Assembly (NCBI GenBank): GCA_943704425.1
Contig: CALSCP010001142.1
Location: 1-33,551, forward strand
Direction: 5' to 3'
DNA length: 33,551 bases
From: Ministeria vibrans ATCC 50519
Lineage: Eukaryota > Protista > Filasterea
Both the position numbers and the translations under genes were made by a program. Positions 5,008-15,888 of the stretch are shown piece after piece; the first letter of the stretch is position 1, and the number at the start of each line of letters is the position of its first letter. The notes under the pieces were generated by a model. That model made no database searches and had not been told where the DNA came from. It saw nothing but the letters and a program-made list of their open reading frames with translations.

Positions 5008-5113
5008 GACGGAGTGGCCGAGCGGTTAAGGCGCGTGACTGCTATCTACTTGCAAAAGTAGGGAGAGTTATCACGTATCATTTGATGCGAGGGTTCGAAT
5101 CCCTTCTCCGTCG
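5008..5113 (+). tRNA. tRNA-Ser(GCU) with canonical 37/38 intron (5045..5069, 25 nt)
   Basis: Acceptor GACGGAG/CTCCGTC, A box TGGCCGAGCGG, anticodon stem CGTGA/TCACG with GCT at 5041-5043, long variable arm, B box GGTTCGAATCC, downstream T-run terminator. Confidence 0.93.
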
Positions 5114-7870: not shown

Positions 7871-8698
7871 CCTCATCGGCCGCTCGTGTGCAAAGTTCCC
7901 AAACGGATCGCTTCATTCCGTGTCCACCATCAAGACACAAGTCCCGTTGTGAATGGTCCCACGCAAACGGCAGGTCGTAGAAACGAGGAGAAAGTGTCGC
8001 GTGGACGGGGCAAGAAAACATTGCGAATGCGCATCACCGATTCACTGCCCGTGCACCATACAGAGTCGAACTAGGGCGAGGCATACTTCACCAAAAGTTG
8101 CACGAAGGAGCAACCGTAGAGGCAAACGAAGAGGCTGAAATATTCTGATTTTTTGATTTTTCTGAAAAGTGAAAAGTGAATTCGTAGTGAAAAAATTTGA
8201 AGCAGATCATCTTTTGACTTTTTAATATTCAAATTTACTCATTAAACGCGCTTGGTCACCCTAGTCCTTACGCTTCCTGCCTAGTGCCTACTGTCACCAC
8301 AATATAACCAATGCTTACTCAAGGTAAACACGCACCCCTACTTCATTCTCGTCTTCTCCCCACTGTCTCTCTCGCTCTGTCTCTCCCTTTCTCGCTACCC
8401 CCCTCCCACTTTCCCTCCACCATTCCAATGTCGAGATGTGTTGTCTCTCACTATCTCTCTCTATTTCTCTCAAGCCCTCTCACTTCCTCTCTTTCTATCG
8501 CCATTCCTTTTTTTTTCTTTTTCTTTTTTTTTGTCGGCGTTTTCCTTTTCGCAAACCGTCTTTGCTTTCCCCAACAGTTCATGGCTGTTCGCGCGTCGTT
8601 GATATGTTCAGTGTGGTGTTGGGATGCAATTGTCTGGGCTTGAGAAGGGCTACTCTTGGCAGTTGCCAAACAAATGTGAAGGGCAAACTTTCGTTTGC

Positions 8699-12032: not shown

Positions 12033-14255
12033 ATGAACAGGATTGTTATCCTGGCTGCAGCCATAGTAGGCTGCTTGGGTGCAAGCAGCACGCCCAACAT
12101 CATTGTCTTTCTCGCGGACGACGTTGGCTATGGCGACTGGCCGAACCATCCCACCATGCTCACGCCAAACCTCGACAAGCTCGCCAACAGTGGCATGCGC
12201 TTCACGCAGTTCTACACCGCCTACTCTATTTGCACTCCGTCACGCAGGTACGCTCAGTTTACCTCAAATCACATTTCATATTCTCTCTCGCTTTTTTGTC
12301 TTCTCCCGTCTCAGCGGAATGTTGACTGGACGTCTTCCGGTTCGCTCAGGTGTCTACAGCAAACACGATCCTCCTGTCCTCGACAACGTCTTTCGCGTAC
12401 GATGCAAGAATACAAACGCAATCCTCACTATTACTTCTTCAACAACCCAAATTTTCAATACCTTTCTAGGTATTCACTCCAAACTCGTATGGTTCTTTGC
12501 CTGCGACCGAGATTACGCTTGGGAACCTGCTGCGCAAAGCTGGCTACTCTACTGGTCTGGTTGGCAAGGTTTGCAAAGAGACGAGTTGAGGCTGAGTCAG
12601 CTAATTTGTTGCCTTCTGCGCTCTTGCAGTGGCACCTCGGCACATACAACAATTCGCTTCCGCTCCACCGTGGCTTTGATTATTATTACGGCATTCCCTA
12701 TGCGCAAGACGAAGGGTGCCCTCCCGAGCCTTGCCACAGCGTAAAGAACTTTTAAAAATGTGTGTCACAAGGTGTTTGACGCACTATATTGTTCCGCAGT
12801 GGCAGCATTTGTTTCCGGGCGTTCCTCTGATCGAAGGCGATACCATCATTGAGCAGCCAGTCGACTTGAACACCTTGACGCCGCGCTACAACGACAAGGC
12901 GACGGCGTTTGTCGACCGCGCTCTCGACAAGAAGCAACCCTTCTTCCTCTACTTTGCCTACGACGAGGCGCACATCCCACTCTTTGCCTCCAACAAGTTT
13001 ATGAACACCTCTCGACGTGGACTCTATGGCGATGCCGTTGCAGGTACTCTCTATCTTTTATATTTATCATTATTAGACAGCTTTTGTACAATTATGAAAT
13101 GTATTGGAAACGCCATTGCCACTTCCCTTTCCCGTTTTTTTTCTTTTTTTTCTTTTCAATTTGCCCGTTCAATTTTTCGCGGAAACCCCCCCACAAAGAT
13201 TCGACACCATATTGATCAAGTGTTGGTCATGTGGTGTGAGTGGATTTATTGTCTTTTTTGTTGTCTGATCTGAAAAGCGCAATAAATCTTAATAATAATA
13301 ATAGTTCTCACTGCGATCCAGCATGCGACGTACCTGTGGCGACACACGCGCGCGACAATAATCCAATAATCCCATCCTCCTTTTTTCTCAGAAATGGACG
13401 ACAGCATTGGGCGAATGATGGAGCACCTGAAAGCACGCGGAGAGCTGAACAATACGCTGGTGGTATTTAGCAGCGACAACGGCGCATGGACGGGCCAGGG
13501 GCTGTCGGGAGGCAGCAACGGACTGTTCCGCGGGGGCAAAGGCTCGACATGGGAGGGTGGCTACCGCATGCCCTGCGTCTTCTCCTGGGCCGACCACATT
13601 CCTGCGGGCACCGTGAACCAGAAACAGGCTAGTCTTATGGACCTCTTCGCGACTTTTGCTGAGGTCGCAGACGTGCCTGTGCCCACCGACCGTGTTCTCG
13701 ACTCTGTCTCCCTCCTTCCCATCCTCCTCGACGCTCATTCCGTAACGCTAGTTCACAAAAAATAATCATGTTTCGTCTTATTTTACGACTATTTTAGCTA
13801 TTATTATTGTTGTTATTATGTGGTATCTTTTCTCCCTCTCTCTCTTACCCGCTGATTTTTTTTATATATAGTCTTCAGTTCCGCGCGACTCGTACATATT
13901 TTATCGACAGCATACCGTGTATGCCATTCGCACAGGTGCGTACAAGGCACACTTCCTGACGCGCCCCGGTTTTGGCGACGATCACATGCCCGAGCACCAC
14001 GACCCTCCGCTACTCTTCAACCTGGAGCACGACCCTGCCGAGGCACTGCCCCTCAATGCCACTCAGTACCCTGATGTGCTCGCTCGCGTCAACGACATCC
14101 TTAAACAGCACGAGAGCACCCTCGTCAAGGGCGAGCCCCAACTCGATCACTGGGACTGGACCTTTAGCATTTGTCCCTGCTGCAACAAAACCACAAAGTG
14201 CCACTGCAACAACGAGTTCAACCCGTACGTTACCGTCGACCTCGACCTGCACTAG
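12033..14255 (+). CDS. Arylsulfatase (ARSA-like, FGly-dependent sulfatase), 7 exons, signal peptide
   Basis: NIIVFLADDVGYGD, CTPSR-SGMLTGR, GK|WHLG, SSDNG, GGKGSTWEGGYR, PPLLFNLEHDPAE, assembled across GT-AG introns. Confidence 0.92.
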
Positions 14256-14760: not shown

Positions 14761-14860
14761 CATAGTAATAATAATAATCAGTAGTAGTAATAAAATAAAA
14801 AAATAATAGTAATAATAATAATTAATAGTAATAATAATATTATTATTAATTTTATTATAT
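14622..14860. repeat. Imperfect (TAA)n microsatellite
   Basis: Directly visible. Confidence 0.9.
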
Positions 14861-14901
14861 TGATGGTCAATTGAAAAGCAAAAAAAAAATGCAGGGAATA
14901 T

Positions 14902-15017
14902 AGGTCCAACGCGGATTCGAACCGCGGTCTTACGGTTCAAAGCCATACGTGCTAATTGGCGCAAGTTAAAATCCATGGGGAGATTTTTGCATCGCGAAAC
15001 CACTACACCATAGGACC
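14902..15017 (-). tRNA. tRNA-Gln(UUG) with a non-canonical 44-nt D-loop intron (14954..14997)
   Basis: Minus strand reads GGTCCTATGGTGTAGTGGTT[44 nt]AGCACGTATGGCTTTGAACCGTAAGACCGCGGTTCGAATCCGCGTTGGACCT. Removing the insert gives a 72-nt cloverleaf with intact A and B boxes. T-run terminator at 14880-14889. Confidence 0.88.
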
Positions 15018-15226
15018 GTGCTGATTCCAAATTTTTCCTTAAAATGATATATAATATCATTTTTGATTTAGTTGTAATTTTTGCTCTTCCTTGCCCGCTT
15101 CGTACTCTTTAATTCAACTTACAGACACTGTTGCGTCCTACTAATTCTTTCTGTGCTTACTATAATCAAAGTTAGTCGCTTTTTTTTATATTCACATTTT
15201 TATTCTATTCGTCTTTGGGCACTATC

Positions 15227-15888
15227 ATGTCCACTCACACAGCTCAACGTCGTATTGACGATGCCTTTGTACCGGCGGCACGACGCAACGAAGTCAAGGG
15301 CAAGCAGGCGAAGTTGCTGAAAACTTCGAGTGATGCGCGCTCCACTCCCGACAGGGAGTCTTCAATTGCCACCGAGAAGAGTGCCTCGTCGTTAATAGGT
15401 AAAGCTCGACCTCTCATTTGCTGCAGTGAGTAGAACGGGAAAATTGAATGAGGAGAAGGAAAAAAAAAAGCAAAGTTTGCCGGTTGGCCCAAATGGGTTG
15501 ATGTAGCATTTGTTGTCCTTTGCTCTTGTTACAAGTGGGATGCTAGTCACTTGTGTATGTACATTTGCGCTTAATCCGACGCCATTTGCCGCTTTGTAGA
15601 GTCCAGTGAACTTTTGTTGCGAGCCTTTGACCTTGACTCGGCGTACGGTCCTTGCATGGGAATGACGCGTTTAGAAAGGTGTGTTTGCAACCTTGGAACC
15701 ACTACCAAGACCCAACAACTCTGCTCGTCTGACCAGTGTTGGCCTTCTCTTACAACTTTAGGTGGGAACGAGCAAAGCGCAACGGTCTTTCGCCGCCTCA
15801 AGAGGTCCACGCGATTCTTATGGGCTTTCCCTCCAACCACACCTCACACGGACACCTTTGGGCTGGCACAATCGTTGATCGCATGTAA
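15227..15888 (+). CDS. POLD4: DNA polymerase delta subunit 4 (p12/Cdm1), 3 exons
   Basis: PIP-like QRRIDDAF. LRAFDLDSAYGPCMGMTRLER|WERAKRNGLSPPQEV..HLW. Confidence 0.9.

What the first reader, a model, noticed from the sequence alone, without database searches (positions are those of the whole stretch)
14902..15017. tRNA-Gln(UUG) split by an archaeal-style D-loop intron with a bulge-helix-bulge-like motif
Seen: a 44-nt insert (TCGCGATGCAAAAATCTCCCCATGGATTTTAACTTGCGCCAATT) lies in the D-loop, not at 37/38. It folds as an extended hairpin (CGCGA/TTGCG, AAAATC/GATTTT). Its 3' CCA pairs with the D-loop TGG, leaving 3-nt unpaired segments UUU and UUA on opposite strands. Cutting after the second base of each (UU^U, UU^A), as tRNA splicing endonucleases do at BHB motifs, regenerates the canonical AGUGGUUAGCAC and a 72-nt cloverleaf. 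A box, B box and terminator are intact. The central helix is imperfect (one G-A opposition), so the motif is a relaxed BHB/BHL. Known: non-canonical BHB introns occur in Thermoproteales archaea and in algae such as Cyanidioschyzon merolae, while opisthokont introns are essentially all at 37/38. Inference: this holozoan-like organism may have a structure-directed, broad-specificity TSEN and further hidden disrupted tRNAs.
Basis: partly seen in the sequence, partly recalled or inferred. Interest (0 to 1): 0.88.

Follow-up and report, generated by a model that had tools for sequence, protein, structure and literature searches.

The report
D-loop intron in glutamine tRNA gene
What looks like the only gene for the UUG glutamine tRNA in this non-photosynthetic, animal-like protist genome is split in its D-loop by a 44-base insert that folds like the introns cut by the tRNA-splicing enzyme, a layout so far described only in a few algae and archaea; the splicing itself is inferred, not observed.

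Summary
On the minus strand (15017-14902) a tRNA-Gln(UUG) gene is interrupted after nucleotide 20 by a 44-nt insert (14997-14954). The 20-nt 5' part is identical to that of 14 distinct environmental eukaryotic tRNA-Gln genes. In all 14 it runs straight into AGCAC or ATCAC, so the 44-mer is an insertion.

The insert is unique in the 29.7-Mb assembly. Its ends fold with the 5' exon into a relaxed bulge-helix-bulge: a clean 3-nt 5' bulge, a 3-bp helix plus one G·A, and the 3' site in an asymmetric loop.

Four whole-genome searches found no uninterrupted Gln gene. The only other Gln gene (CUG, another contig) carries a 29-nt D-stem insert. CAA codons are common.

Promoter element, A and B boxes and T10 terminator are intact. 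Sen2, Sen34, Sen54, Sen15 and RtcB are encoded.

RNA-run contigs contain the insert and stop at the 5' splice site. No spliced junction was seen, and contigs could not show one.

My reading is a functional ectopic intron of the Cyanidioschyzon type (about 0.7); a pseudogene is the main rival.

The scan noted the same phenomenon earlier on other DNA of this genome, including Gln(CUG), permuted tRNAs and T-arm introns.

The parts
15041..15050 (-). Upstream element ATATCATTTT, 24-33 nt before nucleotide 1. It is a variant of the ATA(G/T)CAC(A/T)TTT motif found upstream of the dispersed nuclear tRNA genes of this genome.
   Evidence: the same motif lies 28-67 nt upstream of Thr, Ala, Met, Ser and Leu genes; Gly(GCC), Trp and Val(CAC) carry looser variants read by eye from the same printout; permuted Gly(CCC)
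14998..15017 (-). Exon 1: tRNA nucleotides 1-20 (acceptor 5' strand, U8, G9, D-stem 5' strand GUGU, D-loop AGUGGUU). Contains the A box (15010-15000).
   Evidence: The identical 20-mer starts 14 distinct environmental tRNA-Gln genes.
14954..14997 (-). 44-nt intervening sequence in the D-loop (between nt 20 and 21). The outer helix h' pairs 14996-14992 with 14964-14960, and there is an inner hairpin.
   Evidence: Its 30-nt core is unique in the genome at up to 3 mismatches.
15000..15003 (-). 5' strand of the central helix H (G15 U16 G17 G18), pairing with intron CCAA 14959-14956: three Watson-Crick pairs plus G15.A62.
14997..14999 (-). 5' splice-site bulge UU^U (3 nt, well formed). Predicted cut between 14998 and 14997.
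   Evidence: RNA-run contigs end at 14997, 14998 and 14990.
14953..14955 (-). 3' splice-site UU^A. Predicted cut between 14954 and 14953. It lies in an asymmetric internal loop (AUUA opposite AG), not in a clean bulge.
14902..14953 (-). Exon 2: nt 21-73 (A21, D-stem 3' strand GCAC, anticodon arm with UUG at 14940-14938, 4-nt variable loop, T arm with B box 14923-14913, acceptor 3' strand with the private T67, discriminator U).
   Evidence: (74.3 bits to model R1)
14880..14889 (-). T10 run, the Pol III terminator, starting 12 nt after the discriminator.
   Evidence: Comparable T runs follow the other dispersed tRNA genes. Its length varies in the RNA-run contigs.

Best explanation
This is a working, single-copy nuclear gene for tRNA-Gln(UUG) that carries an ectopic protein-spliced intron in the D-loop.

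Proposed mechanism:
1. Pol III transcribes it from the genome's usual upstream element plus the A and B boxes, and stops at the T10 run.
2. In the precursor, the last six exon-1 nucleotides and the two ends of the 44-nt insert form a relaxed bulge-helix-bulge (HBh' type).
3. The tRNA-splicing endonuclease cuts in the UUU bulge (Sen2-type site) and in the AUUA loop (Sen34-type site).
4. RtcB joins GGUU to AGCAC, giving a 72-nt cloverleaf.

Shown here:
- the anatomy of the gene;
- that the 44-mer is an insertion relative to other eukaryotic Gln genes;
- the fold;
- the insert's uniqueness in the genome;
- the lack of any uninterrupted Gln gene;
- a second Gln gene of the same design;
- genes for the splicing machinery;
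- RNA that contains the insert.

Inferred: the two cleavages, the ligation, and aminoacylation of the product.
For: 1. Identity and insertion. The exon-1 20-mer occurs in 37 metagenome contigs, representing 14 distinct tRNA-Gln genes (11 UUG, 3 CUG). In every one it is followed directly by AGCAC (9 genes) or ATCAC (5 genes).

2. Structure. The MFE fold and the cloverleaf-constrained fold give the same intron and exon pairing. The BHB register has H = 3 of 4 and h' = 5 bp, p about 0.0015 against shuffled inserts.

3. It is not a repeat. The insert core, exon 1 and the whole gene are each unique in the 29.7-Mb assembly.

4. No back-up gene was found.
- A covariance model of exon 2 scored all 74 candidates: this gene 74.3 bits, Gln(CUG) 67.4, everything else at most 39.9.
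- An anticodon-to-T-loop pattern finds only these two tRNA-like hits.
- An uninterrupted Gln-type D-arm pattern finds only the permuted Val gene.
- ARAGORN finds no Gln among 68 distinct tRNAs in the fetched loci.
- CAA is used as often as CAG (143 against 126 codons), so a UUG tRNA is needed.

5. The sister gene. Gln(CUG) (L072:1492-1593) has a 29-nt insert at 22/23 with H = 4 of 4 and h' = 3, p about 0.003. The two genes differ by several double-sided stem changes that keep pairing (27-43, 28-42, 50-64, 51-63, 1-72, 3-70, 5-68).

6. Genome context. Leu(CAA) has a D-loop insert with the same G.A-closed helix. Permuted Gly(CCC) and Val(AAC) have anticodon-loop and leader helices of 4 of 4 and 3 of 4 pairs.

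7. Expression signals. The upstream motif is shared with other nuclear tRNA genes, and there is a T10 terminator.

8. Machinery. Sen2 and Sen34 keep the catalytic Tyr and His (the Lys is seen only in Sen2; the Sen34 alignment ends before it). Sen54, Sen15 and RtcB are also encoded.

9. RNA. Three RNA-like runs each hold a low-depth contig with exon 2 plus the whole insert, ending at 14997, 14998 and 14990. The flank 15015-15224 has zero depth in those runs.
Against: - No spliced junction was seen. Only contigs of older runs were available; they drop short, rare or modified RNAs, so this is weak evidence either way.
- The 3' site is not a clean 3-nt bulge, and the pair that corresponds to the anticodon-intron pair is G.A.
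- The acceptor stem has a private U6.U67 mismatch, where 14 of 14 relatives have U-A.
- The genome's endonuclease is the four-subunit type. A 2023 review states that this type can only remove introns at 37/38 (PMC10485636).
- The RNA contigs run past the T10 terminator. They may be a Pol II by-product, or a read-through precursor whose last 20-30 nt are simply uncovered, so their end at the splice site may be coincidence.
- The assembly is fragmented (2860 contigs, with masked stretches).
- Four tandem model hits on contig C491 (39.9 bits) could not be read.
Confidence: 0.7

Rival explanations
1. Insertion pseudogene. A once-normal tRNA-Gln(UUG) gene was inactivated by a 44-nt hairpin insertion, and the cell relies on a Gln(UUG) gene that is missing from, or unrecognised in, this fragmented assembly.
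For: - Private U6.U67 mismatch in the acceptor stem.
- Imperfect 3' splice-site geometry with a G.A closing opposition.
- A four-subunit TSEN, thought to be restricted to 37/38.
- No spliced read.
- The assembly has 2860 contigs and masked N stretches, and the C491 hits were not inspected.
Against: - No other Gln(UUG) candidate appears in four independent whole-genome searches, although CAA codons are abundant.
- The insert is not a dispersed repeat.
- Every other stem pair, the promoter element, the A and B boxes and the terminator are intact.
- The only other Gln gene is also D-arm-interrupted, which two independent inactivations would not explain.
- The insert ends have BHB-register pairing beyond chance.
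Confidence: 0.18
2. The insert is not removed. The mature molecule is a 116-nt tRNA with an extra arm growing out of the D-loop. Alternatively, it is a 61-nt D-armless tRNA-like RNA that uses the insert's GCGCCAA as a substitute acceptor strand.
For: - Rfam's tRNA model aligns 14962-14902 alone at 25.2 bits. In that alignment the insert's 3' end pairs with the acceptor 3' strand (CCAA with UUGG).
- RNA contigs contain the insert joined to exon 2.
- Ala(AGC) genes of this genome have a 9-nt longer D-loop that cannot form a BHB.
Against: - 25.2 bits is below the family's cut-off of 29, and two of the seven acceptor pairs fail.
- Exon 1 is letter-for-letter the 5' part of many eukaryotic Gln tRNAs, so it belongs to the gene.
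- In the precursor fold the conserved GG of the D-loop is sequestered by the insert. These bases must be free to contact the T-loop in a working tRNA (established tRNA structure, my knowledge).
Confidence: 0.05
3. The RNA seen in the public runs has nothing to do with tRNA processing. It would be a Pol II transcript: either an upstream antisense RNA of the strongly expressed plus-strand gene that starts at about 15234, or a long 3' UTR of the sulfatase gene that ends at 14255. This rival concerns only the RNA evidence, not the identity of the gene.
For: - The contigs run through the T10 terminator into the AAT repeat.
- Depth is only 3.7-5.4x.
- An antisense start about 236 nt upstream of a strong promoter is ordinary (my knowledge).
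Against: - Three samples end within 8 nt of each other, two of them within 1 nt of the predicted 5' cut.
- There is no poly(A) or adaptor tail at that end.
Confidence: 0.4

Closest known systems
[quoted passage not shown] 2013, PMC3728597)
   Same: - Nuclear, protein-spliced type of intron outside position 37/38.
- The D-loop is the commonest ectopic site there (14 D-loop and 5 D-stem introns of 42).
- Lengths are 11-69 nt, and both strict and relaxed BHB motifs occur.
- Such introns co-occur with permuted tRNA genes and were found because essential tRNAs seemed to be missing.
- Here: 44 nt at 20/21, a relaxed motif, permuted genes in the same genome, and Gln apparently 'missing' to ARAGORN and Rfam.
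   Different: - The host here has no light-harvesting-complex gene and has an animal-like Sen2.
- It encodes Sen15 and Sen54 as well as Sen2 and Sen34.
- Splicing was shown by Northern blot and RT-PCR in C. merolae, and is not shown here.
Archaeal non-canonical BHB introns (Thermoproteales and others), cut by (alpha-beta)2 or epsilon2 EndA
   Same: - The intron is defined by local structure: two bulges around a 4-bp helix, with cuts after the second bulge nucleotide.
- It can sit anywhere in the cloverleaf.
- Relaxed HBh' forms exist (PMC5829648, PMC3239211).
   Different: - This is a eukaryotic gene with Pol III signals, a eukaryotic four-subunit endonuclease and an animal-like gene neighbourhood.
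- The central helix has only 3 standard pairs.
- The 3' site is an internal loop.
[quoted passage not shown]
   Same: - The same enzyme families are encoded here.
- The same genome has many canonical introns whose anticodon loop pairs with the intron. One example is Asp(GUC), with a 4 of 4 helix CUGU/ACAG, read.
- Another canonical-intron gene, Ser(GCU), lies in this window at 5008-5113.
   Different: - The position is 20/21, so a ruler that measures from the mature body cannot apply.
- The D-arm, which is the Sen54 contact, is itself disrupted in the precursor.
- The pair equivalent to the A-I pair is G.A.
Ectopic tRNA introns of the Guillardia theta nucleomorph (Kawach 2005, as cited in PMC3728597 and PMC13578239)
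   Same: Eukaryotic tRNA genes with introns in the D and T regions.
   Different: - Most of those introns cannot form a BHB, whereas this one can.
- Those sit in a reduced algal endosymbiont genome; this one sits in a free-living-type nuclear genome.

Membership tests
tRNA-Gln(UUG) gene (eukaryotic cytosolic type) | Removing the insert leaves a cloverleaf with a UUG anticodon in a 7-nt loop, the conserved D-loop GG, the T-loop, and a Gln-type 4-nt variable loop. | tested here: met
   - Base-pair accounting: 20 of 21 stem pairs are standard, and only U6.U67 fails.
- Exon 1 is identical to 14 environmental Gln genes, and exon 2 has the same architecture as theirs.
tRNA-Gln(UUG) gene (eukaryotic cytosolic type) | Pol III signals: A box, B box, downstream T run, and the genome's own upstream element. 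| tested here: met
Protein-spliced (BHB) tRNA intron at a non-canonical position | Two 3-nt bulges on opposite strands separated by a 4-bp helix, with the cuts after the second bulge nucleotide giving the correct junction. | tested here: inconclusive
   - The 5' bulge UUU and h' (5 bp) are clean.
- H has 3 standard pairs plus G.A.
- The 3' site lies in a 2x4 internal loop.
- This fits the relaxed HBh' class but not the strict hBHBh' class.
Protein-spliced (BHB) tRNA intron at a non-canonical position | A mature RNA lacking the insert exists. | tested here: inconclusive
   Read laying on 4 runs found no joint, but all four runs are held as contigs, which cannot show a 72-nt modified RNA. RNA containing the insert is present.
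Protein-spliced (BHB) tRNA intron at a non-canonical position | The host encodes the splicing endonuclease and a ligase. | tested here: met
   Sen2 and Sen34, Sen54, Sen15, RtcB.
Protein-spliced (BHB) tRNA intron at a non-canonical position | The host has other disrupted tRNA genes that need the same activity. | tested here: met
   Gln(CUG) D-stem insert, Leu(CAA) D-loop insert, and permuted Gly(CCC) and Val(AAC).
Insertion pseudogene or dispersed-repeat insertion | The insert is a member of a repeat family, or an intact paralogue exists elsewhere. | tested here: not met
   - The insert core is unique at up to 3 mismatches.
- No intact Gln gene was found.
- Caveats: the assembly is fragmented and the C491 hits are unread.
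Self-splicing (group I or II) tRNA intron | A catalytic RNA core of hundreds of nucleotides. | tested here: not met
   The insert is 44 nt, and there is no Rfam intron family hit in the window.

The most novel reading that the evidence does not exclude
A non-photosynthetic, animal-related protist with the standard four-subunit TSEN (Sen2, Sen34, Sen54, Sen15) and RtcB routinely splices introns out of the D-arm and re-joins permuted tRNAs. Both glutamine isoacceptors would depend on it absolutely. That would be the first case outside algae, nucleomorphs and archaea. It would show that the alpha-beta-gamma-delta endonuclease is not confined in vivo to position 37/38.
Probability: 0.55. Interest if true: 0.8.

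Novelty: new member of a known kind. Interest (0 to 1): 0.64.

Why it matters
Current reviews hold that the four-subunit endonuclease of animals, fungi and amoebozoans recognises the whole tRNA body and can only remove introns at 37/38 (PMC10485636). On that view, non-canonical introns belong to archaea and a few algae with simpler or uncharacterised enzymes.

This genome has animal-like Sen2 and all four TSEN subunit families. Yet its only recognisable genes for both glutamine tRNAs are interrupted in the D-arm, the very region that Sen54 is thought to hold.

If these genes are spliced, three things follow:
- The enzyme's structure-only (BHB) mode is used in vivo in a relative of animals.
- Standard annotation tools (tRNAscan-type settings, ARAGORN, Rfam) silently miss essential tRNAs in such genomes.
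- The origin of disrupted tRNA genes (ancient retention or repeated gain) can be tested in a second, non-algal eukaryotic lineage.

Glutamine makes a clean genetic argument, because there is one gene per anticodon and no back-up.

Tried and rejected
- ARAGORN finds no tRNA in the window with default settings. With intron settings it miscalls this gene as Trp(CCA) with an intron at 32, and miscalls Gln(CUG) as Gly(UCC). These calls were rejected because exon 1 is identical to the 5' part of true Gln genes.
- Rfam scores only exon 2 plus the insert tail, below its threshold.
- Common descent of the two Gln inserts was tested. They share words such as ATG.AAAA.ATCT, but the local alignment score is not significant (p about 0.05), so I make no claim of homology.
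- Spliced reads: read laying found no joint. With contigs this is no evidence against splicing.
- Relatives of the organism: none are available to the genome search. The metagenome hits are other eukaryotes, not close kin, so covariation across orthologues could not be tested.
- Taxon: the look-up of encoding contigs was blank, the protein atlas was uninformative, and the Myb search gave only generic animal-type Myb hits. I rely on the absence of LHC and on Sen2 being closest to animal Sen2.
- The four tandem model hits on C491, and those on C2433, C519 and C1345, could not be inspected. C2263 proved to be Glu(CUC). C491 matches neither the Gln pattern nor the Glu pattern.
- Under the operators' rule, the spliced model was searched exon by exon only: the exon 1 pattern, and exon 2 by reference. 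The joined exon1+exon2 sequence was never searched or folded.

Full report
**What is there**

The finding lies on the minus strand.
- Nucleotides 15017-14998 are the first 20 nt of a tRNA: acceptor strand GGUCCUA, U8, G9, D-stem GUGU and D-loop AGUGGUU.
- 14997-14954 is a 44-nt insert.
- 14953-14902 continues with A21, the D-stem 3' strand GCAC, an anticodon arm with loop CUUUGAA (UUG at 14940-14938), a 4-nt variable loop, a T arm with a perfect B box (14923-14913), the acceptor 3' strand and the discriminator.
- A T10 run follows after 12 nt (14889-14880).

ARAGORN and Rfam do not recognise the gene. ARAGORN reports nothing at default settings, and Rfam gives 25.2 bits against a cut-off of 29 for exon 2 plus the insert tail. 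This is the usual fate of such genes.

**Is the 44-mer an insertion?**

I scanned the metagenome collection with exon 1 alone. The 20-mer occurs in 37 contigs, representing 14 distinct genes.
- All 14 are tRNA-Gln genes (11 UUG, 3 CUG).
- In all 14 the 20-mer is followed at once by AGCAC (9 genes) or ATCAC (5 genes).
- All 14 end in TAGGACC.

The same comparison shows one private change in the window's gene: T67 gives a U6.U67 mismatch in the acceptor stem.

A 276x DNA contig from an independent run label (X19) is colinear with the window over 14860-15300. The insert is therefore real DNA, though that run may be the sample the window was assembled from.

**Structure**

The unconstrained MFE fold (z = -3.1) and a fold with the four cloverleaf stems enforced give the same arrangement around the insert.
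- D-loop U16 G17 G18 pairs with the insert's CCA.
- UUU forms a 3-nt bulge that holds the 5' junction.
- CGCGA/UUGCG stacks directly on it, and an inner hairpin follows.

- central helix H = G.A, U-A, G-C, G-C (exon positions -6 to -3 paired with the four insert nucleotides before the last two);
- outer intron helix h' = 5 bp;
- B1 = UUU and B2 = UUA.

The two other registers that would give the same product have no such pairing. With shuffled inserts the joint condition occurs at p about 0.0015, or about 0.005 after correcting for three registers.

The unpaired stretch is AUUA opposite AG, the closing 'pair' is G.A, and the D-stem starts one nucleotide out of register. This is the relaxed HBh' class, not a strict motif.

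**Is it a repeat or a dead copy?**

- The whole gene, exon 1 (up to 3 mismatches) and the 30-nt insert core (up to 3 mismatches) each occur once in the 29.7-Mb assembly.
- I built a covariance model from exon 2 of this gene and of the one similar gene I had found. Searching the whole genome scored all 74 candidates: this gene 74.3 bits, the second gene 67.4, and nothing else above 39.9. One of the lower hits, C2263, is Glu(CUC).
- A pattern linking a YUG anticodon loop to a T-loop finds only these two tRNA-like sites.
- A degenerate pattern for an uninterrupted Gln-type D-arm finds only a permuted Val gene.
- ARAGORN on all fetched loci finds 68 distinct tRNAs and no Gln.
- CAA is as common as CAG in the window's reading frames (143 against 126). 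A CUG anticodon cannot read CAA (established decoding rules), so the cell needs a Gln(UUG) tRNA, and this is the only candidate gene.

**The sister gene**

A census of B-box matches gave 41 hits against 2 in the control. It turned up tRNA-Gln(CUG) on contig C1507 (L072:1492-1593).
- It has a 29-nt insert between G22 and C23, in the D-stem 3' strand, and is followed by a T9 run.
- Its boundaries also satisfy the BHB register: H = 4 of 4 (three G.U pairs), h' = 3 bp continued by a 5-bp hairpin, B1 = AGA, B2 = CCC, p about 0.003.
- The two genes differ by many double-sided stem changes that preserve pairing, so both have been kept as tRNAs.
- The two inserts are not significantly alike (p about 0.05), so I do not claim a common origin.

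Other first readers had flagged this gene independently.

**Genome context**

The same census and a D-arm pattern show further disrupted genes.
- Leu(CAA) has a roughly 21-nt D-loop insert, H = 3 of 4 and again closed by G.A, plus a canonical intron.
- Three Ala(AGC) copies have a 9-nt longer D-loop.
- There are many canonical introns whose anticodon loop pairs 4 of 4 with the intron, for example Asp(GUC).
- Two genes are circularly permuted. In Gly(CCC) the anticodon loop UUCC pairs with GGAA of the leader. Val(AAC) is present in two copies.

The dispersed nuclear tRNA genes share an upstream element ATA(G/T)CAC(A/T)TTT, 28-67 nt before the gene, and a T run after it. The Gln(UUG) gene has ATATCATTTT at position -33 and its T10 run.

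**Host and machinery**

- No chlorophyll a/b-binding (LHC) gene is found.
- The genome encodes two catalytic endonuclease subunits. They align with human TSEN2 and TSEN34 and keep the catalytic Tyr and His; the Lys is seen only in the TSEN2 alignment, because the TSEN34 alignment ends before it.
- The Sen2 homologue is closest to animal Sen2, at 43-49% identity.
- Sen54 (38.9 bits), Sen15 (33.1 bits) and RtcB are present.

This is the animal and fungal type of enzyme set. A 2023 review states that this type can only remove introns at 37/38 (PMC10485636).

In the library I searched, ectopic introns and permuted tRNA genes in eukaryotes are reported only for red algae, prasinophytes and nucleomorphs. 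I could not name the organism.

**RNA**

Runs X1-X3 behave as RNA-seq. They have no depth at 15015-15224 and 200-300x depth from 15234-15238 onward, with an adaptor at the start.

Each of these runs holds one low-depth contig (3.7-5.4x).
- It covers exon 2, the entire insert and the 3' flank beyond the T10 run.
- It ends at 14997, 14990 or 14998, which is at the predicted 5' cut.

Three readings are open:
- a 5'-cleaved splicing intermediate on a read-through transcript;
- an unspliced precursor whose last 20-30 nt are simply uncovered at this depth;
- a Pol II antisense transcript.

No joint was reported, but contigs cannot show a short modified tRNA.

**Verdict**

The best explanation (about 0.7) is a functional gene with an ectopic, endonuclease-spliced D-loop intron of the kind described in Cyanidioschyzon merolae. 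There, the D-loop is the commonest ectopic site and lengths are 11-69 nt (PMC3728597).

The main rival (about 0.18) is an insertion pseudogene with the true gene hidden in assembly gaps. The private U.U mismatch, the imperfect 3' site and the enzyme type speak for it. The lack of any other Gln gene, the intact signals and the identically built sister gene speak against it.

As a kind of element it is known. Its interest lies in the host lineage and enzyme type, and in glutamine decoding apparently depending on it entirely.

The scan had already noted this class of tRNA gene many times on other DNA of the same genome.

Noticed in passing
L072:1492-1593 (G000:C1507, about 8077-8178, + strand): tRNA-Gln(CUG) gene with a 29-nt insert between G22 and C23 (D-stem 3' strand), BHB-register pairing (H 4 of 4, h' 3 bp plus a 5-bp hairpin), and a T9 terminator. 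ARAGORN miscalls it as Gly(UCC).
   Followed up: yes
window 5008-5113 (+): tRNA-Ser(GCU) gene with a canonical anticodon-loop intron of about 25-27 nt. It is the only tRNA that Rfam finds in the window (50.1 bits).
   Followed up: partly
L052:1393-1522 (G000:C1255): tRNA-Leu(CAA) with two interruptions: a roughly 21-nt D-loop insert (H 3 of 4, closed by G.A as in Gln(UUG)) and a canonical intron. ARAGORN miscalls it as Thr.
   Followed up: partly
L099:140-240 (G000:C2647) and L100:270-390 (G000:C40, two copies): Circularly permuted tRNA genes, with the 3' half upstream of the 5' half: Gly(CCC) and Val(AAC). In Gly(CCC), the anticodon loop UUCC pairs 4 of 4 with GGAA of the leader. Gly(CCC) also has a U6.U67 mismatch, like Gln(UUG).
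   Followed up: partly
L034, L041, L042 (G000:C123, C434): Three tRNA-Ala(AGC) copies with a 17-nt D-loop (9 extra nt, ACGCUUCUU) that cannot form a BHB. It is either a giant D-loop or a mini-intron.
   Followed up: no
L102:190-270 minus strand (G000:C1653): An odd tRNA-like gene with a long acceptor stem interrupted by a bulge and a UCA-containing loop. It is possibly the intron-containing tRNA-Sec noted by another reader.
   Followed up: no
upstream of dispersed tRNA genes, e.g. window 15050-15041, L053, L054, L084, L090: A shared upstream element ATA(G/T)CAC(A/T)TTT lies 28-67 nt before the mature 5' end, and T runs are often followed by GCATTTTT. It is probably the Pol III upstream promoter of this organism, and it implies long leaders.
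   Followed up: partly
G000:C585 (35.5-37.4 kb), C2083 (6.8-8.4 and 37.9-38.8 kb), C2093: Dense tRNA clusters with genes 70-200 nt apart. In the C585 and C2093 clusters GTT-repeat spacers are seen. The clusters lack the upstream element and T-run terminators, and use G34 anticodons such as Arg(GCG), Val(GAC) and Ser(GGA). They may be a different transcription mode or DNA of different origin.
   Followed up: no
G000:C1523 (55,949 bp): An AT-rich contig with more than 25 tRNA genes on both strands. It is probably the mitochondrial genome.
   Followed up: no
L104 and L126 (metagenome contigs JAABUO010031190.1 and JAABUZ0100032800.1): A tRNA-Gln(UUG) gene of another environmental eukaryote carries a canonical intron plus an insert of about 46 nt at the variable-loop/T-stem border. 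Ectopic tRNA introns therefore occur in further uncharacterised eukaryotes.
   Followed up: no
window 15234-15300 (+): A strongly expressed transcript (200-300x in RNA runs) starts at 15234-15238. The first ATG (15227) lies upstream of that start, and the reading frame from it is only 68 codons, so the product is unclear.
   Followed up: no
G000:C491:11963-12501: Four tandem 52-nt hits (163-nt spacing, 39.6-39.9 bits) to the Gln exon-2 model. They match neither the Gln nor the Glu anticodon pattern.
   Followed up: no
window 14956-14962 with 14903-14909 (minus strand): The insert's 3' end (GCGCCAA) can also pair with the acceptor 3' strand (UUGGACC, using the private U67). This competes with the BHB fold, and it is how Rfam aligns the region.
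   Followed up: partly
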